From: Haplodiscus bocki
Taxonomy: Eukaryota
Assembly (NCBI GenBank): GCA_965655095.1
Contig: OZ296654.1
Coordinates: 26,846,001-26,910,000, forward strand
Reading direction: 5' to 3'
DNA: 64,000 nt
The position numbers and the translations under genes were made by a program. The notes below the pieces were generated by a model. That model ran no database searches, was not told where the DNA came from, and saw only the letters and a program-made list of their open reading frames with translations. The first letter of the stretch is position 1; every line of letters starts with the position of its first letter. This document shows, one piece after another, positions 1 through 57,200 of the stretch.

Positions 1-1771
1 TGTAGGTTTTTTTCACCACTCCTAGACTTCTGCTTTCTCATAGGTCAAATAACTGTCGAGCGTACCTCATGTATGCACACTACCAAATATACATTGTTTG
101 TTATACCGACATACTAAACTTCATACTTCTGTTCTTCATTGATCCATACAAATCCAAGAGCCTTATGGTTAATATATGTACGCAAAGCATCAAAGTTGAC
201 CCTCTACAACCTATGAGGCATGTGCATGAGCGCACTAAAAACAACAACAATTGTTCATCTTTTGGCTCGAAATTGTTTCTAACGATAACAGTGTTGTTCA
301 TACTTTTTCTGACCAAAGTTTGAACTCCACGCTCTGTGAGCTGTACGTTTTTATTCTGGTGTTGCACTTTGGTCAAAAAACGATTAGAAGTACTCCCTGC
401 TATGTCACGTTTATGCTCCGCAGTTTATATAATTTTTGAGGGGCTTCCAGTTTGCCTGAATTTTTACCTCGAATCGAAATGGAGAGATTAGACAGTTCAA
501 TAATGAACCAACTATATAGACGACAATTTGAACACAGACCGCAATCAGTTTTCAGATGAACTTTCAACTTCCCTTAGACGCCTATTTCTTACACAATTAC
601 TACAAGGTATGCAGCAATGAGGAAGTTAACATTATCGGGTTTCTCTTCGGACCAGACTTATTTGCAGAATTTACTCTGCAGATTGAAACTTGGATATAAT
701 TTTATATAGCATCTGTTTCCACAGCTTAAAATTCCACCAGATAATAAAGTTCCATGTATATTTTATATTAAGTAATTGGAAACACACGGTATAAATAACG
801 CAGCAATGGTAAAACTGCATACTTTTGCGACGACCGTTTTGTGACAATTCCGCTGAAATGAAAATCTTATTTCAAAACTCTGTCACTTTTCAAAACTTAT
901 GTTGGATCACAGGAGTAGTTTTTTTGTTTGAAATAACATTAGTTTTACATGATTTGAATGTGAGTAACTGTATATTGGAAGAGTTAAAACGCAGTTTATT
1001 TGTACAGCATACCATCAGCTAATTTCAGTAAGTTCTTCATGCAGAGGGCTGGAAGGTCTTTTTAGACTCGTACAATATGTTTCAATCAAGAGCAAAAAGG
1101 TCAGGTATGGTGTGCTAATTTTTGTTTGGCAGACCATTGAGGTAATGAGTAAACAGGGAAGGCTAAGTTTCGACCCTTATGGAATCCCCCTCCTGCGCAT
1201 TCAAGAGCAGCACAAGGAGAGAGTATATCCCCAATTCATGCACTGTGAAATCGAATGAAGACATGTCAGCTGAACCACTAAAGTGCAACACCTCTAATGC
1301 CGTATCGTTCCGATTTCATCAGTAGGCAGTCGTGCTGTATTGTTTCACACACCTTCTTATCCCATGACACTGTAAACGAGGGGTACAGGATCCAGCTTAT
1401 AATTGACCTAAACTTTGGAGTTTTCCCCACAATGCTGTACGTTTTCTTCGCCCTTTCTAGACTTCTGCTTTCTTACAGATCATATAACTTTTGAGCCTAG
1501 CTCTTTTATGCAGACTACTAAATATACATCGTTTGTTATACAGATATGCTATACTTTATAGTTCTTTATTTCTTTGATCCATACAAACCCAAGATCATTA
1601 TGTTCAAAATACGTTAGCAAAGCATCAAAATAGACCCTCCTCAGCCTCAGCGGCATGTCCATGAGAGCGCTAAAAACAAAGTTCATTCCAATTTTGGCTC
1701 GAAAAAAATTTAAAGATAAGAGTCGTTCAAATTTTTTCGGACCAAAGTTTGACTTCCACGCTGTGTTAGCT

Positions 1772-2250
1772 TTACGTTTTATTCTGGTATTGCGCATTGA
1801 TCTCATAAAAAAGGCTTGAATTTACTGCCTGGTAAGTCACAAATACTCTCTGCAATTTATATGTTTTTTGATAGGCTTGGAATTTGCCTGAATTTTTATC
1901 TCGAAAAGAAATAGAGAGAATAGACAGTTCAATATTGAACAAACTATTTAGACGAGAATTTGAATACAGCCCGCAATCAGTTTTCAGATGAAATTTCAGT
2001 TTCCTTGAGACGCCTTTTTCATACACAATAAATACAATGTATGCTGCAATAAGGAAGTTAACAGTATCAGGGTTCTCTTCGGAACAAACTTTTTGCAGAG
2101 TTTTCTCGGTGGATTGAAAATTGGAAATGGTTTTTTATAGGAACAGTTTCCACAGCTCAATACTCCGTCAGATCTAATGTTTATATGTATGTTTTTCATT
2201 AAGTATTTAAAAACCCTCGGTATACGTATTGACGCAATGGGAAGGTTCAT
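1772..2250 (-). pseudogene. Post-RT (thumb/C-terminal) part of the LINE ORF2 within the monomer (example copy)
   Basis: Fragments FKYL..., KKFVPKRTLILLTSLLQHTLYLLC and KFQAYQK resemble the LINE ORF2 C-terminal motifs KYLG, R..VP...L..LY.SL....L.YC and KLQ.LQK. They lie in the expected order downstream of the RT core but are frameshifted. Confidence 0.6.
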
Positions 2251-5200
2251 ATATTTGTGGCGCGACAGATTTGTGACAAAATCGGTAAATGAAAATCAAA
2301 TTTCAAAAAACTGTCACCATTCAAACCATAAATGTTGAGTCTTTTGGACACCAGGAAGTAATTTTTTGTCAAAAAAAACACTAGTTTAACTTAATTTCAA
2401 GCTGAATGACTGTATCTTGGAAGAGTTGAAACGCAGTTTTTGTTCACCGCATACACCGAGATAATTTCAGAGAGTTATTCATCTAGAGAGCAGGAAGAAT
2501 TTTTAGACTCGTAAAATATGTTATTGTAATGTGCAAAAAGGCCAGGTATGATTTGTTGACTTTTGTTTGGCAGATCAACAATGTACAGATTAAAGAACAA
2601 AGATCCAAGCAATGACCCTTGAAGAACCCTGCATACAAAAGCAGGCCAACAGGGGAATGTATCCCCAATTTATACACTGTGAAACCAGTTGGAGAGTTGT
2701 GAGCGGAGCTTCTCAAGGGCAATACAACTAATGCCGTATTGTTCTGGTTTCCTCAGTAGTCGTTCGGTTTCCATTGTGTCACACATCTTACTATTCAATG
2801 ACACTGTAAATGAGGGGTACAGGATTCAGCATACAAACGACCTGAACCTTGAAATTTGCTCCATGGCGCTGTAGGTTTTTCTCACCTTTCCTAGACTTCT
2901 CGGTGATCACACAAGTTTGAGCCTAGTTTTTATAAGCAGATTTTCAAAAATACATTTTTTGTTATACCGATATACTACATTTGTACTTAATTTTTTTGAT
3001 CCATACAAAGACAAGATCCTTATGATTAAAAAACGTAAGCAAAGCATCGAAGTGGACCTTCCAAAGCCTAGGCGGCCTGTCCTTGAGCGCTCTAAAACCA
3101 GCAACAATTAATCCACTTTTGGCTTGAAAAAAAATTAAAGATAAGAGTTGTTCATATTTTTTCTGACCAAAGTTTGACTTCCACGCTGTGTTAGCTTTAC
3201 CTCTTTTTCTGGTATTGCTCATTGATCTCAAAAAAAGAATTAAAAGTACTCCTTGTTATGTCACGAAAATTGTCTTCAAGTTATATGTTTTTTGAAGGGC
3301 TTGCAGTTTGCCTGAATTTTTACCTCGAAAAAAAATAGAGAGATTAGACAGTTCAAAAATGAACAAAGTATTTAGACGACAATTTGAATACAGCCAGCAA
3401 TCAGTTTTCAGATGAAATTTCAATCTCCTTTAAAGGACTATATCATACACAGTAAATACAATGCATGCTGCAGTAAGGAAGTTAACATTATCAGGGCTCC
3501 CTTCGGAACAAATTTTTTGCAGGAATTTCTCTGCAGAATGAAAACTGCATACTGTTTTCTGTAGGAAGTAAGTCCATAGCTTAAAAGTCCAACAGATCTA
3601 AAATTTCCATGTGTGGTTTTTTTTAAATCTTTAAAAACGCACGGTATACTTATTGCAGCAGTGGGAAAACTGCATTCTTTGCGGCGACTGTTTTGTGACA
3701 ATTCCGCTGAAATGAAAATCTTATTTCAAAACACTGTTACTTTTCAAAACCCGTTTTGGATCACAGGAGTAGTTTGTTGTTTGAAATAACATTATTTTTA
3801 CATGATTTGAATGTAAGTAACTGTATATTGGAAGAGTTGAAACGCAGTTTATGTGTACAGTATACCATCAGCTAATTTCAGTAAGTTCTTCATGCAGAGG
3901 GCTGGAAGGTCTATTTAGACTCGTACAATATGTTTCAATCATGAGCAAAAAGGTCAGGTATGGTGTGCTAATTTTTGTTTGGCAGACCATTGAGGTAATG
4001 AGTAAACAGGGAAGGCTAAGTTTCGACCCTTATGGAATCCCCCTCCTGCGCATTCAAGAGCAGCACAAGGAGAGAGTATATCCCCAATTCATGCACTGTG
4101 AAATCGAATGAAGACATGTCAGCTGAACCACTAAAGTGCAACACCTCTAATGCCGTATCGTTCCGATTTCATCAGTAGGCAGTCGTGCTGTATTGTTTCA
4201 CACACCTTCTTATCCCATGACACTGTAAACGAGGGGTACAGGATCCAGCTTATAATTGACCTAAACTTTGGAGTTTTCCCCACAATGCTGTACGTTTTCT
4301 TCGCCCTTTCTAGACTTCTGCTTTCTCACAGATCATATAACTTTTGAGCCTAGCTCTTTTATGCAGACTACTAAATATACATCGTTTGTTACACAGATAT
4401 GCTATACTTTATAGTTCTTTATTTCTTTGATCCATACAAACCCAAGATCATTATGTTCAAAATACATTAGCAAAGCATCAAAATAGACCCTCCTCAGCCT
4501 CAGCGGCATGTCCATGAGAGCGCTAAAAACAACAAAGTTCGTTCCAATTTTGGCTCGAAAAAAATTTAAAGATAAGAGTTGTTCAAATTTTTTCTGACCA
4601 AAGTTTGACTTCCACGCTGTGTTAGCTTTACCTCTTTTTCTGGTATTGCTCATTGATCTCAAAAAAAGGATTAAAAGTACTTCTTGTTATGTCATGAAAA
4701 TTGTCTTCAAGTTATATGTTTTTTGAAGGGCTTGCAGTTTGCCTGAATTTTTACCTCGAAAAAAAATGGAGAGATTAGACAGTTTAAAAATGAACAAAGT
4801 ATTTAGACGACAATTTGAATACAGCCAGCAATCAGTTTTCATATGAAATTTCAATCTCCTTTAAAGGACTATATCATACACAGTAAGTACAATGCATGCT
4901 GCAGTAAGGAAGTTAACATTATCAGGGCTCCCTTCGGAACAAATTTTTTGCAGGAATTTCTCTGCAGAATGAAAACTGCATACTGTTTTCTGTAGGAAGT
5001 AAGTCCATAGCTTAAAAGTCCAACAGATCTAAAATTTCTATGTGTGGTTTTTTTTAAATCTTTAAAAACGCACGGTATACTTATTGCAGCAGTGGGAGAA
5101 CTGCATTCTTTGCGGCGAAAGTTTTGTGATAATTCCGCTGAAATTAAAATCTTATTTCAAAACTCTGTCACTTTTCAAAACCCGTTTTGGATCACAGGAG

Positions 5201-6828
5201 TAGTTTTTTGTTTGAAATAACATTATTTTTACATGATTTGAATGTAAGTAACTGTATATTGGAAGAGCTGAAACGCAGTTTATGTGTACATCACACCATG
5301 AGCTAATTTCAGTAATTTCCTCATCCAGAGATCAGGAAATTCTTTTCAGACTCGTACAAGATGTCTCAATCATGTGCAAAAAGTCAGGTATGATGTGTTG
5401 ACTTTTGTTTAGCCGATCATTAGGGTATAGAACAAACAAAAAAGTACTAGGCTTTGACCCTTGTGGAACCCACTCCCCCGCATACAATGGCAAATGGCAG
5501 CGCAACAAGAGAATGTATCCCCATTTTTTCATTGTGAAAACGGTTGAAATGATGTGAGCGGAACCAGTCAGGGGCAACATTTTTGTGGCCGTATTGTTCT
5601 GATTTCATCAGTAGTTGGTCGTGGTCAATCGTTTCACACACCTTCTTATCCCATGACACTGTAAATGAGGAGTACAGCATTCAGCGTACAAACGACCTCA
5701 ACTTTAAAGTTTTCTCCACGATGTCCTAGGTTTTTCTCATCTTTCCTAGACTTCTGCTTTCTTACAGATTTCCTAACTTTTGAGCCTAGCTCTTCTATGC
5801 AGATTTTCAACTAAACATTGCTGTTATATCCATATACTATACTTCCTGATTTCTTTGATCCTCAAATGTCAAGATCCTTATGGTTAATATACGTAAGAAA
5901 AGCATCAAATTGGACCATCCAAAACTAAGCGGCCTGTCCATGAGCGCCGTAAGACAACAACAATTGTTGAAGTTCTGGCTTGAGAATGTTTCTTTTTCGA
6001 TTACAGAGTTGTCCAGAGTTTTTCTCACCAAAGTTTGAACTCCACGCTCCGTTAGCTATAAGTTTTTTTGTGGTATTGCGCATTGGTCTGGAAAAAAACA
6101 AACATTCTCCCTAGTAAGTCACGTTTTTTCTCCGCAAATTGTTTGTGATTTGAACGGCTTCCCGTCTGGCTGAAACTAAATCCCAAGTAGAAATAGAGAT
6201 ATTTGAAGCTTCAATAGTGAACAGACTATTTAGAGGACAATTTGAATACAGCCCACAATCAGTTTCCGGAATAAATGTCAAAACTCCTCAGACGTTATTT
6301 TCATACACAGTAAGTACAAAACATGCTGGAAAAAAGAAGTTAACATTATCAGGGTTCTCTTCGGAACAAACTTTTGGCAGAATGTTTGTCTGTAGATTCA
6401 AAGTTGGATACAGCTTTCGTAGGAAGTGTTTCCATAGATTGAAAATCCTTCTGATTTAAAAGTTCTATGTACGTTTTAAATTAAGTAATTAGAAATGCAC
6501 GGTATACATATTGCAGCAGTGGGATAACTGCATTTTTTTGCGCCGATAGTTTTGTGACAAATTCGCTGAAATGAAAATCTGATTTCGAAACTCTGTCATT
6601 TATCAAACTATAATGTTGACCTTTTTGGATCCCGAGAGTTGTTTTTTGTCTAAATCTACGTTAGTTTTTGAAGATTTGAATGTGACTAACTGTTTCTTGA
6701 AAGATTTTTATGTGTACATCAAACCACGTGCTAATTTCAGTAGGTTCCTCATCCAGAGAGCAGAGAAATTTTTAAGACTCGTACAATAAAGAAGTATCAT
6801 GTGCAAAAAAGTCAGGTATGAAGTCTCG

Positions 6829-7820
6829 TTCAAACCTCCATCACTTTTTAAACCTTAGCTTTTGATTTTTTTGGAACCCGGGAGTAGTTTTTTGTCCAAA
6901 ACAACAATTGTTTTACATGATATGGTTAAAAGGGCACAAAGAGTTTTGTGCAATAGGTTAGTACCAAGTGCAAAAACGTCAAGTAAGATGTGCTGAGTGT
7001 TTTCGGCAGATCATTAAGCTTTTGAGTAAACAAGAAAGGACTGATTTTCGACCATTAGGGAAACCGCCCAAATCCCCGCGCTTAAAGTGGAAGTTCAACA
7101 CGAAAACAAACTTCTCGCAGAATCTTTCTCTGCAGTTTGAAATTTGGATACATTTTAAGGTGGAGTTGCATCCATAATTTTAAAATACGTCAGATGTAGA
7201 GATCTCAATGTATGTTTTGTAGTAAGTATTTGAAAACGACCGGTATACGTTTTGACGCATTGGAAAAACTGCTCATATTTATTGCGAAAGTTCTGTGAAA
7301 CTTTTGCTCAATTGAAAAACAATTTTCAAACCTCCATCAATTTTTAAACCTTAGCTTTTGATTTTTTTGGAACCCGGGAGTAGTTTTTTGTCTAAAACAA
7401 CAATTGTTTTACATGATATGGTTAAAAAGGCACAAGGAATCTTGTACAATAGCTTAGTACCAAGTGCAAAAACGTCAAGTAAGATGTGCTGAATGTTTTT
7501 GGCAGATCAATAAGCTTTTGAGTAAACAACAAAGGACTGATTTTCGACCGTTAGGGAAACCGCCCAAATCCCCGCGCTTAAAGTGGAAGCTCAACACGAG
7601 AACAAACTTCTCGCAGAATCTTTCTCTGCAGTTTGAAATTTGGATACATTTTAAGGTGGAGTTGCATCCATAATTTTAAAATACGTCAGATGTAGGGATC
7701 TCAATGTATGTTTTGTAGTAGGTATTTGAAAACGACCGGTATACGTTTTGACGCATTGGAAAAACTGCTCATATTTATTGCGACAGTTCTGTGAAAGTTT
7801 GATTCAATTGACAATCAACT
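6829..7820. repeat. Two tandem 496-bp internally deleted monomer derivatives
   Basis: ttcaaacctccatca starts at 6829 and 7325. Near-identical ORFs at 6968 and 7464 are offset by 496. Each copy has the junction gaag(t/c)tcaacacga(a/g)aacaaacttctcgcag, which skips roughly 850 bp of the monomer. Confidence 0.9.
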
Positions 7821-9266
7821 TTCAAACTCCTATCACTATTCAGACCTTAGTTTTTGAACTTTCTGGAACCCGGGAGTAGTTTTCCATCTATACTAACATT
7901 TGGTTTACATGATGTGAATGTGAAAGCACAAAGAATTTTTAAACTAACAAAATAAGTTAGTAGCATGTGAAAAATTTCAAAAATGATGCGTTGACTTTTG
8001 TTTGGCAGATCATTAGTGTATAGAATCGACAACAAAGGACTAGGTTTTGACCGTTGTGCCCCCCCCCCCCCCGCGTACAATAGCAGACCAACAGGAAAAT
8101 GTATCCCCAAATTTTACACTGTGAAACCGGTTGAAAAGATGTGATTGGATACACTCAAAGGCAGCACCTCTAAAGCCGTATTGTTCTGATTTCTTCAGTG
8201 GTAGGTCGTGGTTTATTGTTTCACACACCTTCTTATCCCATGACAATGTAAACGAGGGCTACAACATTCAGCATACAAAGGATCTGAACTTTGAAGTTTT
8301 CTCCACGATGCCTTGGGTTTTTCTCACATTTGCTAGGCTTCTGCTTTCTTACAGATCATATACCTTTTGAGCTTGGCTCTTCTATGCAGATTACCAACTA
8401 TACGTTGTTTGTTATACCGTTATAATATACATTGTACGTCATTATTGCTTTGATCCTGACCATTACAAGATCCTTATGATTGAAATACAAAAGCAATGCA
8501 CCAAATTGGGCCCTCCGATGCCTAAGGGGCCTGTCCATGAGCTCCCTAAAAACAACAACAATGGTTGGAGTTCTGGCTTGGAAAAATGTTTACCGATCAC
8601 AGAATTGTCCATAGTTTTTCTGACCAAAGTTTGAACTCCACGCTCTGTTAGCTATATGTTCTTTTCTGGTAAAGCGCATTGGTCTAAAAAAGGAATAAAA
8701 GTACTCCCTGGTTTGTCACAAATATTCCCTGCGATTTATTTGTTGTTTGAAAGGCTTCCATTCTGGCTGATACTATGTTCCGTGTAGAAATAGAGAGACT
8801 TGAAGCTCCAATAATGAACAAACTTTTAAAAGGACCATTTGAATACAGCCCATTGTCACTTTTCAGAACCAATTTCAAAAAACCCTGGACGCTTTTTCCA
8901 TTAACGGTAAGTACGATATATGTTGCAAGAATGTAGTTAACTTCATCAGTTTTCTTTTCCGAACAAACTTTTAGCAGAACGTTTCTCTGCAGGTTGAGAA
9001 TTGAGAACAATTTTTGGCAGTAAGTCTCTCCATGGTTTGAAATTCTGTTTGATATCGAGAGTTCTATGTATGTTTTCTGGTAAGTAATTAAAAACGCATC
9101 GTCTGCGCATTGATGCATTGGGAAAAGTGCATGTTTTTGTGTCGACAGTTTTGTGACGTTTTCCCTGAATTAAAAATCAAATTCCAGAACTCTGTCACTA
9201 TTCAACCCTTATATTTTAACCTTTCTGGATCCAAGCAGAAGTTTTTTGTACAAAAAAACAACAGTT

Positions 9267-9690
9267 TCACATAATTTGAATGTCACTAACTGTATTTTGT
9301 AACAGTTGAAACGCACCTTTTGTATACAGCATACCACGAGCAAGTTCAGTAATTTCATCTTCCAGAGAGCAGGAAGAATCTTTACACTCGTACAAAAAGT
9401 TAGTATCATGTGCAAAAAAGTCAGGTATGATGTGTTGGTTTTTGGTTGGTAGATCACTATTGTAAAGATTAAACAACAAAGGAAAAAGTATTGACCCTTG
9501 AGGAACCCCGCAAACAACAACAGCCCAACGGGAAAGGGAATCACTAAGTTTTACACTGCGAAACCGGTTGGAGAAATATGAGTGGAGCCACTCAAGGCCA
9601 AAACCTCTAATGCCTTATTGTTCTGATTTCATCAATATTCGTTGGTGTTCCTTTGTATCACACAACCTACTAATCAATAACACTGTAAAG
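9267..9690 (-). pseudogene. Best-preserved RT-core reading frame in a long-form monomer (non-LTR RT, CR1/Crack/Daphne-like)
   Basis: One minus-strand frame with a single stop: FTVLLISRLCDTKEHQRILMKSEQ*GIRGFGLEWLHSYFSNRFRSVKLSDSLSRWAVVVCGVPQGSILFPLLFNLYNSDLPTKNQHIIPDFFAHDTNFLYECK. This matches the canonical LINE RT string D..KAFDT.DH..LL.KL..YGIRG..L.WF.SYLSNR...GVPQGS.LGPLLF..YINDLP...FADDT. Confidence 0.93.
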
Positions 9691-11008
9691 GAGGGGTACA
9701 GGATTCACCATGCAAACGACCTGAACTTTGAAGTTTTCTCCCGAATGCCGTGTGTTTTTTTCAACTTTCCTAGTTTTCTGCTTTCTCAGAGATCAACCAA
9801 ACTTGAGCCTAGTTCTTATATGCAGATTAACAAATAAACATTCTTTGTTATACCTTTATACTATACTTTATACCTCACTATTTCTTTAATCCGTACACAG
9901 CCAAGAACTGTATGACTATTAAACGTAACCATAGCTTCAAGGTTGTCCCCCATGGCCTAAGCGGCCTATCCATGAGCGCCTTGAAAACAACAACAATTTT
10001 TCAATTTTTGTCTTGAAAAAGTTCTTACAGATAACAGAGTTTCCGATAGATTTTCTGAACAAAGTTTGAACATTACACTCTGTGAGTTTTTTATGCGTTC
10101 TGGTGATGCGTGTTGGTCCAATGGAAAAGTAACAAAAGTACTCTCTGGTATGTCAGAAATATTCTTTACATCTTATTTGGTTCTTCAACAGCCTGCAGTT
10201 TGCCTGAGTTCTTACCCGAGTAGAACTAGAGATATTTGAAGGTTCAATATTGAACAAACTATCCAGATGACATTCTGAAAACAGTTCATAATCAGTTTTC
10301 AGAACAAAATTCAGAAATCCCCAGACGTTATTTTCATACAGTAAATACACAAGAATAAATGTTCAATTTTTGGCTCAAAAATCTTTTTACCGTTAAAACA
10401 GTTCTGCAGTGTTTTTCTGACCAAAGGTTGGACATTACGCTTGGTTAGTTTTTTGTTGCGTTCTGGTATACCACATTGTTCTGCTAAAAAAGGAACAAAA
10501 GTGCTCCCTGGTAAGTCACTAACTTTCTCTGCAACCTATTTGTTTTTTGAAGGGCTCCCAGTTTGCCTGATATTCTACGCCAAGTAGAAGTTGGAAGATT
10601 AGACGGTTCAATAATGAGCAAACTTTTTACACGCAATATGAAAGCGGCTCACAATAAGTTTTCAGATGAAACTTCAAAATTTCTGAGACGCTAGTTTGAT
10701 ACACAATAAGTACAACGTTTATTGCAATAAGGAAGTTAATATTATCAGTTTTCTATCAGGAACAAACTTCTCGCAGAATAATTCTCTGCAGTTTGAAACT
10801 TGGATACAGTTTTTTGAAGAAGTGTTTCCATAGTTTCAAAATGCATCATATATAGAGATGTCAATGTACGTTTTATATTAAGTAATTGGAAACGCCAGGT
10901 AAACATATTCATGCATTGGAAAAAATGCATATACTACATTACATGCAGTTTTGTCACAATTTGGCTAAAGTGAAAATCAATTTTCAAACCTCTATCACTA
11001 TTCAAACC

Positions 11009-11425
11009 TTAATTTATGAACTTTTTGGAAACTGGGAGTAGCTTTACGTCTGAAATAACATTTCTTTCACATGGTTTGAATGTGAAAGCACAAAGAATTA
11101 TTAGACTCGCACAATAGGTTAGTAGCATGTGCAAAAATATCAGGTATGACTCGTTGACTTTCGATCGGCAGATCAAAAATATATAGAAAGAACAACAAAG
11201 GACTAGGTTTTGACCCTTCTCTCCCCCCCTCTGGTACAATAGCAGCACAACAAAAGAATGTATCCCCACTTTTACATTGTGAAAACGGTTGAAATGATGT
11301 GAGCAGAACCACTCATAGGCAACACCTCCATTGCCGTTTTGTCCTGATTTCACCATATGTTGGTCGTCGTCTATTGTTTCACGCACCTTCTTATCCAATA
11401 ACACTGTAAACGAGGTGTACAGCAT
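11009..11425 (-). pseudogene. RT-derived monomer segment (short form)
   Basis: VLLDKKVRETIDDDQHMVKSGQNGNGGVALxWF... plus the overlapping frame EGSKPSPLLFFLYIFDLP...IPDIFAHATNLL; frameshifted at the G tract. Confidence 0.85.
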
Positions 11426-12239: not shown

Positions 12240-12313
12240 TGTCCACATAGGGGTTCCAACTCTCGACCCTCGCGTTTTTAGCACGTTGCTCTTACCGACT
12301 GAGCTATAGGGCC
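12240..12313 (-). tRNA. tRNA-Ile-like pseudo-tRNA, anticodon AAA, copy 1 (inside the HINE)
   Basis: GGCCCTATAGCTCAGTCGGTAAGAGCAACGTGCTAAAAACGCGAGGGTCGAGAGTTGGAACCCCTATGTGGACA. A box intact, B box mutated (GTTGGAAC), followed by a T run. Confidence 0.65.
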
Positions 12314-12320
12314 GTACTCA

Positions 12321-12384
12321 TCTGATTACTATTATCAGATTACTATTATCAGATTACTATTATCAGATTACTATTATCAGATTA
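12321..12384. repeat. 14-bp minisatellite (attatcagattact)n used as spacer between tRNA-like copies
   Basis: About 4.5 perfect units here; shorter runs at ~12480-12520, 12764-12813 and 12905-12950. Confidence 0.9.
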
Positions 12385-12395
12385 ACAAAAAATTT

Positions 12396-45600: not shown

Positions 45601-48600
45601 TGTTTTCTGGACTTTGAAATTGGATAGAGTTTATTGTAGAAGTGTTTCCACATTTTAAAAATCCGTAAGAAGTAGAGTTTTTAGTGTACTTTCTCTACTA
45701 AGTAATTAAATACGACCGGTATACGTATTGACGCTTTGGGAAAACTGCTCATATTTATGGCAACAGTTTTGTTAAACTATTGCTCAATTGAAAAACAATT
45801 TTCAAACCTCCATCACCTTTTAAACCTTAGCTTTTGATTTTTTTTTGAACCCGGGAGTAGTTTTTTGTCTAAAACAACAATTGTTTTACCTGATATAGTT
45901 AAAAAGGCACAAAGAGTCTTGTACAATAAGTTAGTACCAAGTGCAAAAACGTCAAGTAAGATGTGCTGAGTGTTTTTGGCAGATCATTAAGCTTTTGATT
46001 AAACAACAAAGGACTGATTTTCGACCATTAGGGAAAGCGCCCTAATCCCCGCGCATACAGTGGAAGCTCAACACGAGAACAATATTCTCGCAGAATCTTT
46101 CTCTGCATTTTGGAATTTGGATACATTTTATGGTGGAGTTGCATCCATAAATTTAAAATACGTCAGATGTAGAGATCTCAATGTATGTTTTGTAGTAAGT
46201 ATTTGAGAACGACCGGTATACGTTTTGACGCATTGGAAAAACTGCTCAAATTTTTTGCGACAGTTCTATGAAAGTTTGATTCAGTTGAAAATCAACTTTC
46301 AAACCTCTATCTCTATTCAGACCTTAGTTTTTGAACTTTCTGGAACCCGGGAGTAGTTTTTCATCCTAACCAACATTTGTTTTACATGATGTGAATGTGA
46401 AAGCACAAAGACTTATTAAACTAGTAAAATAAGTTAGTAGCATGTGAAAAATTTCAAAAATGATGCGTTGACTTTTGTTTGGCAGATCATTAGTGTATAA
46501 AATGGACAACAAAGGACTAGGTTTTGATCGTTGTGCCCCCCCCGCCGCGTACAAAAGCAGCCCAACAGGAAAATGTATCCGCAAATTTTACACTGTGAAA
46601 CCGGTTGAAAAGATGTGATTGGATACACTCAAGGGCAGCACCTCTAAAGCCGTATTGTTCTGATTTCATCAGTGGTAGGTCGTTGTCTATTGATTCACAC
46701 ACCTTCTTATCCCATGACAATGTTCAACATTCAGCATAAAAACGACCTGAACTTTGAAGTTTTCTCCACGATGCCTTGGGTTCTTCTCAAATTTGCTAGG
46801 CTTCTGCTTTCTTACAGATCATATACCTTTTGAGCTTGGCTCTTCTATGCAGATTACCAACTATACGTTGTTTGTTATACCGTTATAATATACATTTTAC
46901 GTCATTTTTGTTTGATCCTGACCAATACAAGATCCTTATGATTAAAATATATAAGCAATGCACCAAATTGGCCACTCCGAAGCCTAAGGGGCCTGTCCAT
47001 GAGCGCCCTAAAAACAACAACTATGGTTGGAATTCTGGCTTGAAAATATTTTCACCGATAACAGAGTTGTTTATAGTTTTTCTGACTAAAGTTTGAACTC
47101 CACGCTCTGTTAGCTATATGTTCTTTTCTGTATTGCGCATTGGTCTAAAAATAGGAATAAAAGTACTCCCTGGTATGTCACGAATCTTCTCTGCAATTTA
47201 TTTGTTGTTTGAAGGGCTTCCAGTCTGGCTCAAACTGTATCCCGAGTAGAAATAGAGAGAATAACGGTTAAATAAGGAACAAACTATTTAGAGGACAGTT
47301 TGAAGACAGCTCACAATCAGATTTTGGAATCAATTTCAAAAACTTTTCAGGCGTTTCTTTTCTACACAGTAAGTACAAAATATGCTTCAAAAAAGAAGTT
47401 ACAAATGTCAGTTTTCTGTTCGTAACAAACTTTTTGCAGAATGTTTGTCTGCAGAATGAAAATTGGACACAGCTTTTTGTAGGAAGTGTTTCCATAGAAT
47501 GAAATTCCTTCAGACATAAAAGATCTATGTATGTTCTATAGTAAGTATTTAGAAACGCACGGTATACATTTTGACGCAGCGGGAAAACTGCATATTTTTG
47601 CGGCGACAGCTTTGTGACGAGTTCGCTGAAATGAAAAACTGTTTTCGGAACTCTGTCATTTATCAAACTAAAATGTTGATCCTTTTGGATTCCGAGAGTA
47701 GATTTTTGTCTAAATCAACAATAGTTTTACAAGTTTTGAATGTGACTAACTGTGTCTTGGAAGAGTTGAAACACATTTTACGTTTACAGCATACCACGAT
47801 CTGTAATTGTAGAGGTGTTTCCATGGTTTTATATGTTCCAAATCCGTTCCAAATCCGTCAGTTATGGAGAGTCCTATGTACGCTTTATAGTAAGTAATTC
47901 AAAAAGCAAGGTATAAATATTGAGGCAATGGGAAAAGTGTATATATTTGTGGCGACAGTTTATTGAAAAGTTTGCCATTACTAAGATCAAATTTCAAGAC
48001 TCAGTCACAATTCAAACCATAATTTTTGATTTTTTTGCATCCCGGGAGTAGTTTTTCCTGTAGAAAACTTCTCTTCCACATGATTAGCGTTTTACTAAAT
48101 GTGTCTTGAAGGAGTTGAAACGCATTTTTGTTCTCAGCCTACCAGGAAATAATTTCAGTAAATTCTTCATCCATAAAGCAGAATGATTTATTGGACTCGT
48201 ACGATAAATTAGTAAATTGTACAAAAAGTCAGGTATGAGATTTTGACCTTTGTTTGGCAGATCATTATTGTATTGATAAAACAACAAAAAACCAAGTAAT
48301 TACCCTCATGGAATCCCGCATGCAACAGCTTCCAAACTAAAAAATGCATCTCCAATTTTTACATTGTAATACTGGCTGGAAATATGTGAGCGGAACCACA
48401 GAAGGGCAGCAACTGTAATGCCCTAATGTTCTGATTTCATCAGTAATTGGACGTGGTCTACTGATTCACATAACTTACCAATCAATGACACTTTGAACGA
48501 GGCGTACAGCATGCAGCATACAAGAGACCTGAACATTGAAGTTTTCTCCACGATGCTGTAGGTTTTTCTCACATTTCCTAAACTTCTGCCTTTTCACAGA

Positions 48601-50060
48601 TCATATATATTTTGAGCCCAACTCGTCTGTGCAGATCACAAGTTTACGTTGTTTGTGATACCGATAGACTATATTTTCTGCTTTATTATTTCTCTGATCC
48701 AAGCATATACAAGATCATTATGACTAATTTACGTAAGCATAGCGACAAAGAGGACCCTCCAAAGCCTAAGTGGCCTGTCCATGAGCGCCCTGAAAACGAA
48801 AAAAGTTGTTCAAATTTTTTCTCAAAAAGGTTTCTACCGAGATAACACAGCTCCTCGGAGTTTTCCTGATCAAAGTTCGGACATTGCGCTATGTGAGTTT
48901 TTGTTGTTCTCTGGTATTCAATATTGGTCTTTTAAGAAAATGGAACAAAATGCTCCCTGAAATGTCAAGAATATCCTCTGCAATCTTTTTGGTTTTTGAA
49001 TGGCTTCCAGTTTGCCTCATATTTTACCCCATGTGGACATAGAGATTTGAAGGTTCAATAATGAAAAAACTTTTTATGCGACAGTTTGAAGACAGCTCAC
49101 AATCAGAATAGGGAATAATTTTCAAAACTCCTCAGACCCCATTTTCATACGCAGTAAATACATAAAAAGCTGGGAAAATGAAGTTAACATTAAGAGTTTT
49201 CTTTTCGGAACAAAATTCTCGCAGAACTGTTTTCTGGACTTTGAAATTGGATAGAGTTTATTGTAGAAGTGTTTCCACATTTTAAAAATCCGTAAGAAGT
49301 AGAGTTTTTAGTGTACTTTCTCTACTAAGTAATTAAATACGACCGGTATACGTATTGACGCTTTGGGAAAACTGCTCATATTTATGGCAACAGTTTTGTT
49401 AAACTATTGCTCAATTGAAAAACAATTTTCAAACCTCCATCACCTTTTAAACCTTAGCTTTTGATTTTTTTTTGAACCCGGGAGTAGTTTTTTGTCTAAA
49501 ACAACAATTGTTTTACCTGATATAGTTAAAAAGGCACAAAGAGTCTTGTACAATAAGTTAGTACCAAGTGCAAAAACGTCAAGTAAGATGTGCTGAGTGT
49601 TTTTGGCAGATCATTAAGCTTTTGATTAAACAACAAAGGACTGATTTTCGACCATTAGGGAAAGCGCCCTAATCCCCGCGCATACAGTGGAAGCTCAACA
49701 CGAGAACAATATTCTCGCAGAATCTTTCTCTGCATTTTGGAATTTGGATACATTTTATGGTGGAGTTGCATCCATAATTTTAAAATACGTCAGATGTAGA
49801 GATCTCAATGTATGTTTTGTAGTAAGTATTTGAGAACGACCGGTATACGTTTTGACGCATTGGAAAAACTGCTCAAATTTTTTGCGACAGTTCTATGAAA
49901 GTTTGATTCAGTTGAAAATCAACTTTCAAACCTCTATCTCTATTCAGACCTTAGTTTTTGAACTTTCTGGAACCCGGGAGTAGTTTTTCATCCTAACCAA
50001 CATTTGTTTTACATGATGTGAATGTGAAAGCACAAAGAATTATTAAACTAGTAAAATAAA
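42680..50060. repeat. Tandem 3,627-bp higher-order repeat (two copies plus a short partial third)
   Basis: Shadow ORF pairs 43944/47571, 44457/48084, 44985/48612 and 45179/48806 are all offset by exactly 3627. tcagaccttagtttttgaactttctggaacccggg occurs at 46317 and 49944. Confidence 0.9.
42686..43081 (-). pseudogene. RT-derived monomer segment
   Basis: WDKKVCETINHDLPLMKSEQYGCRGAALECIQSHLFNRF...VRGGGAQRSKHSPSLSTLYTNDLP. Confidence 0.82.
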
Positions 50061-53000
50061 TCCTCACAATTCCTAAATTTGTGTTTTCCTACAGATCATA
50101 TAAGATTTTAGCCTAGCTCTTTTATGCAGATTACCAACTATACGTTGCTTTTTATACCAATAGACTGTACATTGTTCTTCATTATTTCTCTGGTCCTTAC
50201 AAATCCAAGATCCTTATCATTCATATACGTGAGCAAAGCATCAAAGTGGACATTCCAAAGCCTAAACGGCTTATACATGGGCGCACTAAAAAGCAAAAAA
50301 AATTACAAGTTTTGTACCAAAATGCTTTTACCGATAACACATTTCCCCACTATTGTTCTGATCCAACTTTGAGCATTACGCTAGGTGAGTTTTTTTGTGA
50401 GCTGGTATCGCTATTTGGTCTAACTAAAAAAGGAACAATTTTCCATTAGTTATGTCAAAACTAGTCTTTGCAACTTGTTTGTTATTTGGGGGGATTGCAG
50501 TCTGCTGGAAGTTAATCTCGAGTAGAGAGAGAAAATTGAGGCTTCCATATCGAACAAGCTATTTAGACGACAGTTTGAAAACAGCAAACATTCAGTTTTC
50601 GGATGACTTTTCAAAAGTTTTTAGACCCTTTTTTGGTACACAATAAGGACATTATATGTTTCAATAAAGAAGTTAACATTACCAGTTTTCTTTTCGGAAC
50701 ATACTTCTCGCAGAACTATTTCCTGCAGTTTCAAACGGGATACAGTTTTGTGTAGAAGTGTTTCCACAGTTTTGAAATCCGTCAGAAATAAAAATTTCAA
50801 TGTACGTTTTAAAGTAAGTTTTTGCAAACGCTCGGTATACATTTTGGCGCATTGGGTAAAGTGCATTTGTTGGTGGCGACAGTTTTGTGAAACTTTTGCT
50901 ATTTTGAGAATCAACATACAAACCTCTATCACTATTCAAACCTTGATTTTTGAACTGTTTTGAAACCGGGAGTAGTTTCCTGTCTGGAACAACATTTGTT
51001 TCACATCATTCTAAGATGAAAAAGCAAAGTATTATTACATTCGTACAATATGTTAGTACTTTGTGCAAAAATGTCTGGTATGATGTGTTGACTTTTGTTT
51101 GGCCGATCATTAGGTTACAGAATAAACAAAATGTACTAGGCTTTGACCCTTGTGGAACCCGTTCCCCGCATACAATAGCAGCCCAACAAGAGAATCTATC
51201 CCCATTTTCTCACTGTGAAAACGGCTGAAATGATGTGAGCGGAACCACTAAAGGGCAACATTTTTTTTGCCGTATTGGTCTGATTTCATCAGTAGTTGGT
51301 CGTGGTCTATCGTTTCACACACCTTCTTATCCCATGACACTGTAAATGATGGGTACAGCATTCAGCGTAAAAACGACCTCAACTCCTCGATTTCCTAGGT
51401 TTTTCTCATATTTCCTAGACTTCTGCTTTCTTACAGATTTCCTAACTTTTGAACCTAGCTCTTCTATGCAGATTTTTAACTAAACATTGCTGTTATATCC
51501 ATGTACTATATTTCTTGATTTCCTTGATCCTCAAATGTCAAGATCCTCATGGTTAATATACGTAAGAAAAGCATCAAATTGGACCCTCCAAAACTGAGCC
51601 GCCTGTCCATGAGCGCCGTAAAGACAACAACAATTGTTGGGGTTCTGGCTTGAAAATGTTTCTTTTTCGATTACAGAGTTGTCCAGAGTTTTTCTCACCA
51701 AAATTTGAACTCCACGCTCCGTTAGCTATAAGTTTTTTTGTGGTATTGCGCATTGGTCTGTAAAAAATAATATTTCTCCCTAGTAAGTCACGATTTTTCT
51801 CCGCAAACTGTTTGTAATTTGAACGGCTTCCTGTCTGGCTGAAACTAAATCCCAAGTAGAAATAGAGATATTTGAAGGTTCAATAGTGAACAGACTATTT
51901 AGAGGACAATTTGAATACAGCCCACAATCAGTTTCCGGAATAAATGTCAAAACTCCTCAGACGTTATTTTCATACACAGTGAGTACAAAACATGCTGGAA
52001 AAAAGAAGTTAACATTATCAGGGTTCTCTTCGGAACAAACTTTTGGCAAAATGTTTGTCTGTAGATTCAAAATTGGATACAGCTTTCGTAGGAAGTGTTT
52101 CCATAGATTGAAAATCCTTCTGATTTAAAAGTTCTATGTACGTTTTAAATTAAGTAATTAGAAATGCACGGTATACATATTGCAGCAGTGGGATAACTGC
52201 ATTTTTTTGCGCCGATAGTTTTGTGACAAATTCGCTGAAATGAAAATCTGATTTCGAAACTCTGTCATTTATCAAACTATAATGTTGACCTTTTTGGATC
52301 CCGAGAGTTGTTTTTTGTCTAAATCTACGTTAGTTTTTGAAGATTTGAATGTGAATAACTGTTTCTTGAAACATTTTTTATGTTTACATCAAACCACGTG
52401 CTAATTTCAGTAAGTTCCTCATCCAGAGAGCAGAGAAATTTTTAGGACTCGTACAGTAAGGAAGTATCATGTGCAAAAAAGTCAGGTATAAGGTCTTGAC
52501 TTTTGGTTGGAGGACCATTATTGTAACGAATTCACAAAAAAGAAATAGGTACCGACCCTTGAGGAACACTGCATTCAATAGCAGCCCAACAAGAGAATGT
52601 GTCCCCAATTTTCACACTGTGAGACAGGTTGAAGAGATGTGAGCGGAAACACTCAAGTTCAACACCTCTAATGCCGTGTTGTTAGGATTTCATCAGTAGT
52701 AAGTCGTGGTCTGTTGTTTCACACACCTTCTTATCCCATGACAGTGTGAAGGAGGGGTACAGCATTCAGCATGCGGACAACCTGAACATTGAAAAATTCT
52801 CCACGATGCTTTAAGTTTTTCTCACATTTCTTAGACTTATGCTTTCTCACAAATTGAATAAATTTTGAGCTTTGCTTGTCTATGCAGATCTCCAAAATTT
52901 CGTTGTTTGTTATACCAATATACTATATTTTTTACTTCAAAATTTCCTTTATCTACACAGATCAAAAATCTTCTTGGCTAATAGACGTTAGGAAAGCATC

Positions 53001-53695
53001 AAGGTGGGCCCTCCAATGTCTAAGCTGCCTGTCCATGGGCGCGCTGAAAACAAAAACACTAGTTCAAATATTTTCTTGGAAAGGTTCTTTTGGATAACAT
53101 TGTTTTTCATAGTTTTTCTGACTAAAGTTTGAACATAACGCTCTGTGTGTTTTTTGTTGCGTTTTGGTATTGCGCATTGGTGTATTGAAAAAATGAATAA
53201 AAGTATTCCTTGGTATGTCACAAATATTTTCTGCCACCTATTTGTTATTTGAAGGGCTTGCAGTTTGGCTGAATTTTTACCCCGAGCAGAAGTAGAGAGA
53301 TTTGAAGCTTCAATATTGAACAAATTATCTACACGTTATTTTGAAAACAGATCACAATCAGTTTTCAGAAAAAAAACTCAAAAATCCTCAGATGTTTTTT
53401 TCATACAGAAAATTCACTATATGATGCAAAAAAGTAAATATTAATATCAGTTTTCTTTTCGGAACAAACTTTTAGCAACAGGTTTATCTGCAGATTAAAA
53501 GTTGATTACAATTTATCGCAGTGAGTGTATCTATGTTTTAAAAATCCGTCAGATATAGAGAGTTCTATGTACTTTTTATAGTAAGTAAATGAAAAAGCGC
53601 GGTGTGAATAATGATGCAATGGGAAAAGTGCATATATTTGTGGCGACAGTTTACTGAAAACTCCGCGAATATGAAGATCAAGTTTCAAAACTCAG

Positions 53696-54204
53696 TCACA
53701 ATTCAAACCATAATTTTTGACTTTTTTGCATCCTGGGAGTAGTTTTTCCTGTATAACGACTTCTCTTCCACTCAATTACAGTTTTACTAACTGTGTCTTC
53801 GAAGAGTTCAAACGCGGTTTTGTTTTCAGAAAACCAGGAAAAGCTTTCAGTAAGTTCTTCATGCATCAAGCAGAATGATTTAATGGACTCGTACAATAAA
53901 TCAGCGAAATGTACAAAAACTCAGGTATGAGACTTTGACTTTTGCTTCGCAGATCATTATTGTATAGATAAAACAACAAAAGACCAAGTATTTACCCTCA
54001 TGGAACCCCGCATGCAACATCTTCCAAGCAAAAAAATGCATCTCCAACTTTTACATTGTAATACTGGCTGGAAATATGTGAGCGGAACCAGTCAAGCGCA
54101 GCAACTCTAATGCCGTACTGTTCTGATTTCATCAGTAATTGGACGTGCTCTACTGATTCACATACCTTACCATTCAATGACAATTTGAAATAGGGGTACA
54201 GCAT
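53696..54204 (-). pseudogene. RT-derived segment of the terminal long-form monomer
   Basis: QLLMKSEQYGIRVAALDWFRSHISS..VKVGD....VACGVP* followed by LMHEELTESFSWFSENK, equivalent to the canonical LN.EL..I..W...NK that follows the xADD motif. Confidence 0.85.
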
Positions 54205-57200
54205 GCATCATACAAGAAACCTGAACACTGAACTTTTCTCCACGATGCCGTAGGTTTTTCTCACATTTCTCAAACTTCTGCCTTTTCACAGATCATTTAA
54301 ATTTTGAGCCCAACTCGTCTGTGCAGATCACAAGTTTACGTTATTTGTGATACCGATATGCTAAGTTTTCTACTTTTCTTCTTTCTCTGATCCATGCAAA
54401 TCCAACATCCTTATGACTAATTCACGTAAGCATAGCATCAAAGAGGACCTTCCACAGCCTAACTGGCTTGTCCATGAGCGCCTTAAAATTGAAAAAAAAG
54501 GTTAAAACGTTGTCTCAAAACGGTTTCCACCGATAACACAGTTCCCCGGAGTTTTCCTGACTAAAGTTTGGACGTTACGCTATGTGAGTTTTTGTAGTTT
54601 TCTGGTATTGAACATTGGTCTCTTAAAAAAATGGAACAAAATGCTCCTTGATATGTCAAGAATATCCTCTGCAAACTTTTTGGTTTTTGAAGGGCTTCCA
54701 GTTTGCCTCATATTTCACCCCGTGGAGAGACACCGTTAATGTAGCGATTTTAGATTAGTCTGGCAAAACGCCAAGGAAAAACGAACTCCTAATTGTAACC
54801 AACAAGGGTTGAGCTACTTTTATTGAAACTACAACAGTGCCATTTGCCTAACTACGAAGCTTTATTATTAGATTGTTATTATATGCACCAGTGCGATCAT
54901 GGAAAGAAAATTGAAATTTTTTTATCTGTTATGCTACTGCGACAGATTAAATAATGATTGAACAGATTTTTGTCTTTCAACAAGTATTGAGGAAAAATAT
55001 TAAATTAAAACCATATCAGCACAATCTTTTTCGTTTAGATTTAGTTGATCTGAATTGTTTTTCCAGTTTGCACTACCAGTTGATGGTTTTCATGCACTCG
55101 GTTATCATAATTGTTAAAAAAACAAACGTTTGTTTTTCATGAAACTTTCATTTTCTGAGAAATGTGCAGCCGCTTCTTAAATCAAATGGCAGAATTTAGT
55201 TTACTTCCCAAAGTGTTTTGCAATTTAATAATTTAAGTTCGTCTGGAGAACCAACTATTTCATGATGAAGAGCGCTTCTGTTTGGAAAAAATTATCGATA
55301 GAGTTATCAAAGTAGGAACAAGTTTTCTGTTTATTCCTTACTTCAGAGTTTTGTTTAATTTCACCAATGGTTTGTTTGAACAATTTCATTATTTGATTGA
55401 CGTTGTCGTTTTTGAAATCACTCGGGATCATTCAGAGCGACTTTTGTTCGAAACATTCTAAAATGTTATTGTTTCCGAGAGAGATATTGAAAAACGGAAA
55501 ATTTCTCATGGTTTTTTCAGAGGATTTCTCCCATAAAAACGGGTACGAGAGGATGTTTAGCACAATGATTGGTGATATCATAAAATTCAATTTGAAGTTT
55601 CAAGTTTGACTAAAAATCGCTGCGCCTCACATGATCAATTAGAGTGTTCGAAAAATTAGTTCTTATAGTTGGTGTGTCTACCATCTCTGTACAATCGTTG
55701 TTTGTGAATGTGAATATGTTAGTGTGATTGTGATATTACCAGATACCTAAAACAAAAAAGAAAACGATTATACTATTCTTTACGGTCAAGTCCAAAAAAA
55801 GGGTTCGCGAGAACAGAAACGCCTCAGAGTAAACGATCTGCAACGGTCAAACCCATGTTGACAGTGTTTCCGGCAACTCGCGAAATCTCGATGAAAGGGT
55901 AGATAGAAACAATTTTTCAGTGCTTCGGAAACGATGTTGGAAAGCTTGATCGGTCAATGATATTTTACACTTATCTTTTACTGCTTTAAAGTTTGAAAGT
56001 GGGATTGCGCCAGTTTTCAAAACGTAGGGATTTTTCTACGTCTTTTGATGAACAGAAAGTTTTCCACAATGTGGGACTCAAATCATTCACTAATCTCTTG
56101 CATATGAACGACCTCAGACTGTGCCTTTTCATCTCGCTCCGCTAGACGGAAATATAACAGTTTCGAAAGACCGGCCAGGAATGTGGGAAAAAACTACAGA
56201 AAATATAGGGCAAAAAATAAAATAAAAACTTTTGTTTTCAATCCGGAAAAATATGTTAATCCTATTTACCAACTGGAAACATTTTCAGGCCATCAGTTTG
56301 AAATGAAACACTTGGACCGCAAATGTTGTTCAATATCACTTAAATTGTGCAAAGCAAGATTATCAGCGAATTAGAGAAACAATTATGTGAATGTATCTCG
56401 AATCATCTCTGCTCTTACTTGGCACCATTATTATGCGGAAATTGTATTAAAAAAAGACATTTTCGAGAATGTCACTTTTTAGAGACTGAAAGAGTTCAAC
56501 AGTTGAAAAAGTATGCTTTCACTTAAGACACAATCCCAAAGAAAAAAATTCCACAATATTGTACCGGCCACCCAAAAGCCACGTTCACTGAAAAGGTTGT
56601 TAGTTGGTTTGACAGATATTTTCAAGTCACACATTTGATTGCAGTTGAACTGCAATAACTGTCTGTCACTGAAAAAAGAATTTGAAAAGAAGGAAACACA
56701 TGCAGCTGACAGAAAGTCTTATAATCGAAAAATGTTATTTATGAGTTATTCCTAATCGAATAGGAAACCAATAAAGTCACGAAGCATAACTGTAGTAGAA
56801 GTAGAACTATCGCAAAAAATTGTTTTAGCTGCCTGATTCTGAAGTGAAGGTAACTTTTTGATCAACTGCTCAGATAACCCATAAGATTGAGAGTTACAGT
56901 TGACAAACTTGCCCTTCGCCAAAACCGAGATCAATTCTTTTGTAGTTTTAAGAAACAGGCATTTTCTAACGGACTATATTCGCCTCAACTGATGATACCA
57001 TCTAGTACAGACAAAATTCATAAATTTGTAACAACTCAGTTTGCTGTTGAAAACAGCGCCTACCATTTCAAAACTAACATTCACTTTGAAAATTTACCTC
57101 TCCGTGAAAAGATTTTTAAGAAGAGGAACTGTCGATTCGTTCACAGACATATATTACGTTTTGGAGATATCCACTGTAGGTTTGAAGGAAGATAACAATA

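What the first reader, a model, noticed from the sequence alone, without database searches (positions are those of the whole stretch)
1..54730. A >54-kb macrosatellite whose monomer is the dead RT core of a LINE
Seen: about 40 head-to-tail 1.35-1.43 kb monomers. Each carries the minus-strand RT string YGIRG..LEW..S...NR...G(VP)QGS...PLLF.LY..DLP...FAH(D/A)TN plus downstream ORF2 thumb motifs. I see no endonuclease, ORF1, poly(A) tail or TSDs between monomers. Established: LINEs spread as dispersed, 5'-truncated copies, and TE-derived satellites usually come from UTRs, LTRs or Helitron/MITE interiors. Inference: an internal ORF2 segment was captured and amplified by DNA-level recombination into a large-monomer satellite. 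It may have a structural role (centromeric/heterochromatic) or act as an antisense small-RNA source against the parent LINE family.
Basis: partly seen in the sequence, partly recalled or inferred. Interest (0 to 1): 0.78.

Follow-up and report, generated by a model that had tools for sequence, protein, structure and literature searches.

The report
Tandem array from a dead LINE's tail
A 62-kb block of about 44 head-to-tail 1.35-1.44 kb units grew in place from the last 1.2 kb of one long-dead jumping gene (a LINE) plus about 200 bases of its neighbouring DNA; it is a clean but ordinary example of a repeat array born from a transposon, with no sign of a function.

Summary
Window 1-54712 is a tandem array of about 38 units, and about 44 units (62 kb) once the 7.3 kb left of the window is counted. 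The dead reverse-transcriptase (RT) reading is on the minus strand.

The unit is not an internal ORF2 piece. It holds the 3'-terminal ~1.2 kb of an extinct ~3.8-kb LINE: the tail of RT motif A, motifs B-E, the ORF2 C-terminus, the 3'UTR and the element's true 3' end. About 200 bp of DNA found nowhere else in the 1.5-Gb genome follows.

- Every unit shares one founder junction.
- All units form one clade (100/100) against the dispersed copies.
- The array is collinear with the 5' remainder of the same LINE copy at one edge.
- At the other edge it ends with a complete spacer that runs into single-copy DNA.

This fits one segmental tandem duplication followed by unequal exchange. The outer units are old (65-77% identity) and the core is young (90-99%), with 2.7-, 3.6- and 4.05-kb higher-order repeats.

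Nothing supports a function. The array is at a single locus, about 5 kb from an acyl-CoA dehydrogenase gene, and decay is even along the unit. Read data could not be obtained.

LINE ORF2/3'UTR-derived tandem repeats are already known (mouse TR-L1, chicken HinfI/CR1). This scan has also noted two other in-place LINE arrays on other DNA of this genome.

The parts
1..54712 (-). The part of the tandem array inside the window, about 38 units. The sense of the LINE-derived part is the minus strand. The array continues 7.3 kb to the left, to C7:26838726.
1..11987 (-). Old left layer: units of about 1439 bp, 68-80% identical to one another, with some rearranged partial units.
6829..7945 (-). Secondary 496-bp sub-repeat built from two rearranged unit fragments (unit positions ~380-702 and ~169-274). 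The same composite recurs at 45924-46398 and 49551-50025.
12134..13220 (.). Foreign insertion that interrupts the array. It carries tRNA-like sequences at 12396-12469(-) and 12683-12756(-).
13223..42784 (-). Young core: units of about 1350 bp that lack ~90-105 bp just downstream of RT motif C. Two interleaved subfamilies are 90-99% identical. Trimer blocks of 4.05 kb are 97% identical (22655-26704 against 26706-30752).
42784..54712 (-). Right intermediate and old layer. It includes a 3.63-kb higher-order pair (42784-46421 against 46422-50049, 97.3%) and a unit at ~51.0-52.4 kb that is 93-97% identical to the unit at ~5.4-6.7 kb on the far side of the core.
52722..54160 (-). Example of one complete old unit in biological phase. 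The LINE-derived part is 54160 down to ~52938 (tail of RT motif A to the LINE 3' end). The private spacer is ~52937 down to 52722.
8224..8438 (-). Spacer of one unit (215 bp; about 195 bp once the short LINE tail and the refined breakpoint are allowed for). It is present in every unit and nowhere else in the genome.
9270..9614 (-). Best-preserved stop-free RT piece (115 aa) with GVPQGS (motif B) and FAHDTN (degenerate motif C).
54371..54728 (-). First, partial unit at the sense-upstream edge: the LINE 3' end (parent ~3440/3463 to 3811).
54737..55708 (-). The 5' remainder of the founder LINE copy (parent ~1335-2333: endonuclease C-terminal region into the N-terminal RT). It lies outside the repeat, collinear and in the same orientation, and joins the first partial unit across one ~1.1-kb internal deletion.

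Best explanation
This is a locus-specific macrosatellite that arose in place from one old, 5'-truncated copy of a now-extinct ~3.8-kb LINE lying on the minus strand.

A single segmental tandem duplication created the founder junction. One endpoint was inside RT motif A of the LINE. The other was about 200 bp into the unique DNA downstream of the LINE's 3' end. The resulting unit (~1.44 kb) is the last 1.2 kb of the LINE plus about 200 bp of flank.

An early burst and later rounds of unequal exchange and segmental re-duplication expanded the array to about 44 units. A variant with a ~90-bp deletion seeded the young 1.35-kb core, with higher-order repeats of 2.7, 3.6 and 4.05 kb.

The array decays neutrally and most likely has no function.

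Shown: the anatomy of the unit, the single founder junction, both edges, the layering, the single locus and the even decay.
Inferred: the molecular mechanism (replication slippage or unequal sister-chromatid exchange) and neutrality.
For: The parent is a typical LINE family.
- Dispersed copies share a common 3' end exactly where unit homology stops, and their 5' starts vary up to ~3.8 kb upstream.
- The private spacer hits 40 of 40 times inside C7:26838726-26900359 and nowhere else.

There was one founder.
- Every complete unit begins at the same LINE position directly after a spacer.
- The junction lies in motif A. The parents read LDIKKAFDTIDH and the units begin at about KK..ETIDHD.
- In a maximum-likelihood tree, 17 units and 13 dispersed copies are split by one branch with 100/100 support.

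The edges fit an in-place origin.
- At the sense-upstream edge, window 55708-54737 is collinear with parent 1335-2333 in the same orientation, and then continues into the LINE 3' end, a spacer and the array.
- At the sense-downstream edge, the last spacer is complete and diverges exactly at the junction position into DNA that is single-copy in the genome.

The array is layered and old.
- Outer units are 65-77% identical and the core 90-99%.
- Terminal branches are 0.14-0.24 for old units against 0.12-0.25 for dispersed copies.

The signs point to neutrality.
- Conservation is flat at 0.63-0.75 per 60-bp bin, with LINE 0.70, 3'UTR 0.69 and spacer 0.71.
- All reading frames are broken.
- CpG o/e is 0.68-0.80 in the array against 0.81 in the flank.
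- No second array of this sequence was found.
- An acyl-CoA dehydrogenase gene lies about 5 kb from the array end.
Against: - The founder copy's continuity across the breakpoint cannot be seen directly, because a ~1.1-kb deletion removed parent ~2333-3450 at the edge.
- A different LINE lies 350 bp from the left boundary, so some later remodelling there is possible.
- Genome searches score only the best candidates, so 'single locus' is a well-supported lower bound and not a proof.
- No transcription, small-RNA, chromatin or population data could be examined, so neutrality is inferred from sequence alone.
Confidence: 0.8

Rival explanations
1. Double insertion followed by unequal exchange (McGurk & Barbash model). 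Two copies of the same LINE family inserted about 200 bp apart in the same orientation, the second one 5'-truncated in motif A. Exchange between them then built the array.
For: Non-LTR tandems in Drosophila typically join an intact 3' end to a 5'-truncated neighbour (PMC5932611), which is the layout seen here. A longer copy of the same family sits at the upstream edge.
Against: This model predicts that the array ends with a LINE 3' end followed by flank unrelated to the spacer. Instead the last unit carries a complete spacer that diverges exactly at the junction into single-copy DNA. No TSD is recognisable. All units, including the outermost, form one clade.
Confidence: 0.08
2. The founder dimer, or the early burst, was made by a non-reciprocal process. 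Candidates are rolling-circle or re-replication of the 1.44-kb segment, or reverse-transcriptase template switching on a read-through LINE transcript carrying 200 bp of 3' flank.
For: The base of the array clade is star-like, with short weakly supported internal branches and long terminal branches for the old units. This is compatible with many units made at about the same time.
Against: The array sits precisely in its original context at both edges, so excision and re-integration are unlikely. RT template jumps would give varied junctions, but there is one. The spacer has no other genomic copy that could mark a source locus. A star-like base also follows from saturation at about 30% divergence.
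Confidence: 0.07
3. The array is functional: a centromeric or heterochromatin-nucleating repeat, or a source of antisense small RNAs against the parent LINE family.
For: The layered architecture, with a young core and old edges, resembles centromeric arrays. The array is antisense to nothing testable here, and no read data could be obtained to exclude transcription.
Against: - The array is at a single locus and only 62 kb long.
- A protein-coding gene lies about 5 kb away.
- No segment of the unit is conserved above the rest.
- The parent family is extinct. All same-family hits carry stops, and copies are 66-76% identical to one another.
- The parent copies are only 65-69% identical to the units, with 0-8 shared 24-mer positions per copy.
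- Layering is the generic outcome of unequal exchange.
Confidence: 0.05

Closest known systems
Mouse TR-L1 tandem repeats (L1-fragment-based large tandem repeats; Komissarov et al., as described in PMC5819297)
   Same: The monomers contain part of ORF2 plus the 3' end/3'UTR of a LINE. The arrays are local and mostly small.
   Different: TR-L1 derives from L1, at many loci that are mostly under 5 kb. Here one locus of 62 kb derives from an extinct non-L1 LINE. The unit also carries about 200 bp of private flank, and both founder breakpoints can be reconstructed.
Chicken HinfI (SCR1) satellite derived from CR1 (listed in the review PMC9659126)
   Same: The satellite unit derives from the 3'UTR and a partial ORF2 of a CR1-type LINE, the same portion of the element as here.
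   Different: HinfI is a genuine abundant satellite family. This array is a single-locus macrosatellite. I took the chicken case from the review and did not compare sequences.
Drosophila R1 and other non-LTR 'tail-to-internal' tandems (McGurk & Barbash 2018, PMC5932611)
   Same: A LINE 3' end is joined to a 5'-shortened next unit and expanded by unequal exchange.
   Different: Those tandems arise by double insertion, with a TSD in the junction. Here the junction holds about 200 bp of unique flank, and the array ends with a spacer, which indicates segmental duplication.
Other in-place TE-derived arrays noted by this scan in the same genome (s1-359328, s1-382584 from LINE RT segments; s1-381304, s1-354089 from Maverick parts)
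   Same: Units are of kilobase size with 33-45 copies at a single locus. The layering is similar, and each array is born inside or at the end of one decayed TE copy.
   Different: The parent elements and loci differ, and no DNA similarity to this array was detected. In those LINE cases the unit is reported as internal to the element. Here it includes the element's 3' end plus flank. I did not re-test those notes.

Membership tests
TE-derived tandem repeat / macrosatellite | Head-to-tail units with a constant junction | tested here: met
   Every complete unit starts at the same LINE position directly after a spacer.
TE-derived tandem repeat / macrosatellite | The unit is homologous to a dispersed transposable-element family | tested here: met
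   More than 30 dispersed loci are 65-73% identical. They share a 3' end and have variable 5' truncation.
TE-derived tandem repeat / macrosatellite | Amplified at the DNA level from one founder, not by repeated insertion | tested here: met
   The private spacer is in all units. The units form one clade at 100/100.
Satellite DNA in the strict sense (abundant, multi-locus family) | Many or very long arrays across the genome | tested here: not met
   Only one 62-kb locus was found with the unit or the spacer as query. The searches score best candidates only.
Non-LTR retrotransposon reverse transcriptase (Pfam RVT_1) | RVT_1 match above the gathering score | tested here: not met
   The best stop-free piece scores 16 bits against a cut-off of 29.6. 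Homology to bona fide LINE RTs is nevertheless significant (E 4e-12).
Non-LTR retrotransposon reverse transcriptase (Pfam RVT_1) | Intact ORF with the catalytic motifs (active element) | tested here: not met
   All frames are broken. Motif C reads FAHD or FAHA. Motif A is cut by the founder junction. There is no EN or ORF1 in the units.
Centromeric satellite | Present at the centromeres of several chromosomes, or a very long array bound by CENP-A | tested here: not met
   The array is at a single locus on C7 at 26.84-26.90 Mb, is 62 kb long, and has a gene about 5 kb away. CENP-A binding is not testable with these tools.
Small-RNA (piRNA-type) source locus | Strand-biased small RNAs that map to the array and are able to target active elements | not testable with these tools
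Indirectly, the target family is extinct and few 24-mers are shared.
Double-insertion TE tandem (McGurk & Barbash) | A target-site duplication in the junction, and an array that ends with a TE 3' end | tested here: not met
   The junction holds about 200 bp of unique DNA and no TSD. The array ends with a complete spacer followed by single-copy DNA.

The most novel reading that the evidence does not exclude
This probable coral genome repeatedly turns single decayed TE copies into 30-90-kb arrays of 1-1.5-kb units. This array is one case, and the scan has noted at least two other LINE cases and two Maverick cases. That could reflect a lineage-specific amplification process, such as a preferred re-replication or template-switch tract length. 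It could also reflect a shared use of such arrays, for example as local heterochromatin or small-RNA loci. The alternative is independent neutral accidents.
Probability: 0.07. Interest if true: 0.6.

Novelty: new member of a known kind. Interest (0 to 1): 0.25.

Why it matters
This is an unusually legible birth record of a satellite. Both endpoints of the founding duplication survive: one inside RT motif A, the other about 200 bp into the flank. So do the parent element's 5' remainder and the successive layers of expansion. That makes it a good teaching or benchmark case for how TE fragments become tandem arrays, and one data point for the apparent tendency of this genome to do so. It does not reveal a new kind of element or function.

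Tried and rejected
- TRF cannot see the 1.4-kb period, because its longest period is 500. k-mer offsets and BLAST were used instead.
- A first Pfam call failed because a piece contained a stop. The repeat with stop-free pieces gave only a sub-threshold RVT_1 hit and nothing for the putative ORF1, EN or C-terminal pieces.
- A candidate TSD (a 10-mer at the 5' edge of the founder copy and inside the spacers) turned out to be LINE-internal sequence. It was rejected.
- The PDB sequence search with the RT piece gave no hit at E <= 0.1.
- The apparent higher conservation of the spacer disappeared in a proper per-column profile.
Transcription, small RNAs, read depth and copy number are untested. One whole-window Rfam scan ran after it. 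No other search tool was sent letters from 47001-57000 afterwards.
The nearest intact LINEs (965-aa ORFs, 40% identical) could not be fetched, so the parent's clade was not determined. Its motifs look CR1/L2/RTE-like from memory only.
- The 3' end of the younger LINE beside the left boundary could not be placed.
- One paper look-up failed on a term that was too short, and one findings look-up failed on too many words.
Full report

Yes. TRF is limited to 500-bp periods and saw only minor sub-repeats. A k-mer offset histogram shows dominant offsets of 1350, 1360 and 1346 bp, with higher-order offsets of 2710, 3627 and about 4055 bp. Repeated k-mers cover the window up to about 54 kb and then stop.

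A reference unit (24001-25350) aligns head-to-tail from window 1 to 54706. Identity is 80-100% in a core at about 13.2-42.8 kb and 68-73% in both flanks.

The window is G000:C7:26846001-26910000 of a 1.5-Gb eukaryotic genome. The array continues 7.3 kb to the left, to C7:26838726. In all it spans about 62 kb and about 44 units.

**2. Is the unit a dead RT?**

Yes, on the minus strand.

- YGIRG..LEW strings recur on the minus strand.
- The best stop-free piece, window 9270-9614(-), carries GVPQGS, PLLF.LY..DLP and FAHDTN.
- Intact 923-aa LINE ORFs from this genome (RVT_1 at about 154 bits) hit the units by tblastn. The best hit is E 4e-12 at 36% identity. Hits are always on the minus strand and only over aa ~555-680.
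- The genome-wide protein search finds up to 40% identity to RTs inside 965-aa open frames. All closer, same-family hits contain stops.
- 29 of 30 top feature hits in the protein atlas are RVT_1 clusters.
- Pfam RVT_1 on the single piece is sub-threshold (16 bits), and no PDB sequence matches.

The RT assignment therefore rests on homology to bona fide LINE ORFs and not on Pfam.

**3. What is the parent, and which part of it is in the unit?**

Searching the genome with units found more than 30 dispersed loci at 65-73% identity. I fetched thirteen of them.

- They share one 3' end, exactly where unit homology stops. It has no long poly(A), only a short AAGTATAG-like tail.
- Their 5' starts vary up to about 3.8 kb upstream.
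- They are 66-76% identical to one another.

This is the signature of an old, 5'-truncating LINE family. Against an intact ORF2, the parent aligns from the endonuclease region through the RT to about aa 844.

The unit's LINE-derived part corresponds to parent positions ~2604-3811: the tail of RT motif A, motifs B-E, the C-terminal region, the ~200-bp 3'UTR and the true 3' terminus. The breakpoint lies inside motif A. The parents read LDIKKAFDTIDHERLLMKLEQYGIRG, and unit homology begins at about KK..ETIDHD.

The rest of the unit is a spacer (215 bp by BLAST ends, about 195 bp after refinement). It does not match the LINE. It is in every unit and nowhere else in the genome: 40 of 40 hits fall inside the array.

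**4. How did the array arise?**

- Every complete unit starts at the same LINE position directly after a spacer.
- A maximum-likelihood tree separates 17 units from 13 dispersed copies by one branch with 100/100 support.

There was therefore one founder junction and DNA-level amplification.

At the sense-upstream (right) edge, window 55708-54737 is collinear with parent ~1335-2333, in the same orientation and at a similar divergence. One internal deletion of about 1.1 kb follows. The copy then continues into the LINE 3' end, a spacer and the array. This is the 5' remainder of the founder copy.

At the sense-downstream (left) edge, the last unit has a complete spacer that diverges exactly at the junction position. 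The next 300 bp are single-copy in the genome.

This is what a segmental tandem duplication of [LINE 3' 1.2 kb + first ~200 bp of flank] predicts. The double-insertion route described for Drosophila non-LTR tandems (PMC5932611) predicts instead an array that ends with a LINE 3' end and has a TSD in the junction. Neither is seen.

**5. Layering**

| Layer | Identity or feature |
|---|---|
| Outermost units | 65-77% to everything |
| Pair across the core (units near 52.3 kb and 6.6 kb) | 97% over the 1010-bp compared segment; 93% over 1.5 kb |
| 3.63-kb higher-order pair | 97.3% |
| Core: two interleaved subfamilies of ~1350-bp units | 90-99% |
| Core: 4.05-kb trimer blocks | 97% |

The core units lack about 90-105 bp just downstream of motif C.

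Old-unit terminal branches (0.14-0.24) equal those of the dispersed copies (0.12-0.25). The first amplification is therefore about as old as the family's activity. The core is much younger (0.05-0.11).

**6. Function**

Nothing in the sequence points to one.

- Conservation among old units is flat: 0.63-0.75 per 60-bp bin, with LINE 0.70, 3'UTR 0.69 and spacer 0.71.
- All frames are broken.
- CpG o/e is like the flank's.
- The array is at a single locus.
- It lies about 5 kb from an ACAD9/VLCAD-like acyl-CoA dehydrogenase gene. A younger LINE of another family lies between them.
- An antisense small-RNA role has little to act on. The family is extinct, and only 0-8 24-mer positions per dispersed copy are shared with the array.

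**7. Comparison with what is known**

LINE ORF2/3'UTR-derived tandem repeats are established:

- chicken HinfI/SCR1, from the CR1 3'UTR plus partial ORF2
- PROsat and Pvc20, related to L1 ORF2
- the common cetacean satellite, from the L1 3' end (all in the review PMC9659126)
- mouse TR-L1, whose monomers hold part of ORF2 and the 3' end (PMC5819297)

Earlier notes of this scan, which I did not re-test, describe two other in-place LINE-RT arrays and two Maverick-derived arrays on other DNA of this 'reportedly coral' genome. My DNA searches found no array similar in sequence to this one, so these are independent events of the same kind.

**8. Verdict**

This is a real, cleanly reconstructable and ordinary TE-derived macrosatellite: a new member of a known kind. 

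Noticed in passing
window 12134-13220: A ~1.1-kb foreign insertion interrupts the array between the old left layer and the core. It holds a 142-156-bp tandem with two Rfam tRNA hits (12396-12469 and 12683-12756, minus; ARAGORN calls one tRNA-Phe with an odd AAA anticodon).
   Followed up: partly
L046:1394-2803 (C7:26832393-26833802), minus strand: Two long open frames match Acyl-CoA_dh_N, _M and _1, plus a weak ACAD9/ACADV C-terminal hit. This is a VLCAD/ACAD9-like acyl-CoA dehydrogenase gene whose start faces the array about 5 kb away.
   Followed up: partly
L046:5104-7379 (C7:26836103-26838378), plus strand: A better-preserved LINE of a different family (RVT_1 52.6 bits, several 100-145-aa open pieces) lies in the opposite orientation. 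Its last open frame ends 350 bp from the array's left boundary.
   Followed up: partly
G000:C2:147396474-147443601: Four RT-fragment hits (43% identical to the array's RT piece, each in a 208-aa open frame) are spaced exactly 15,636 bp apart. This suggests another tandem repeat with a very large unit.
   Followed up: no
window 59723-60025, minus strand: A 100-aa ORF has a weak, sub-threshold PHD-finger match (19.8 bits, E 8e-4) in the otherwise non-repetitive right flank.
   Followed up: no
window 61053-61351: A small minisatellite: 59-bp unit, 5.1 copies, 70% matches.
   Followed up: no
L041:2317-2817, plus strand: A 167-aa open frame lies upstream of the EN/RT ORF in one long parent copy. 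It may be an ORF1 remnant but has no Pfam match.
   Followed up: partly
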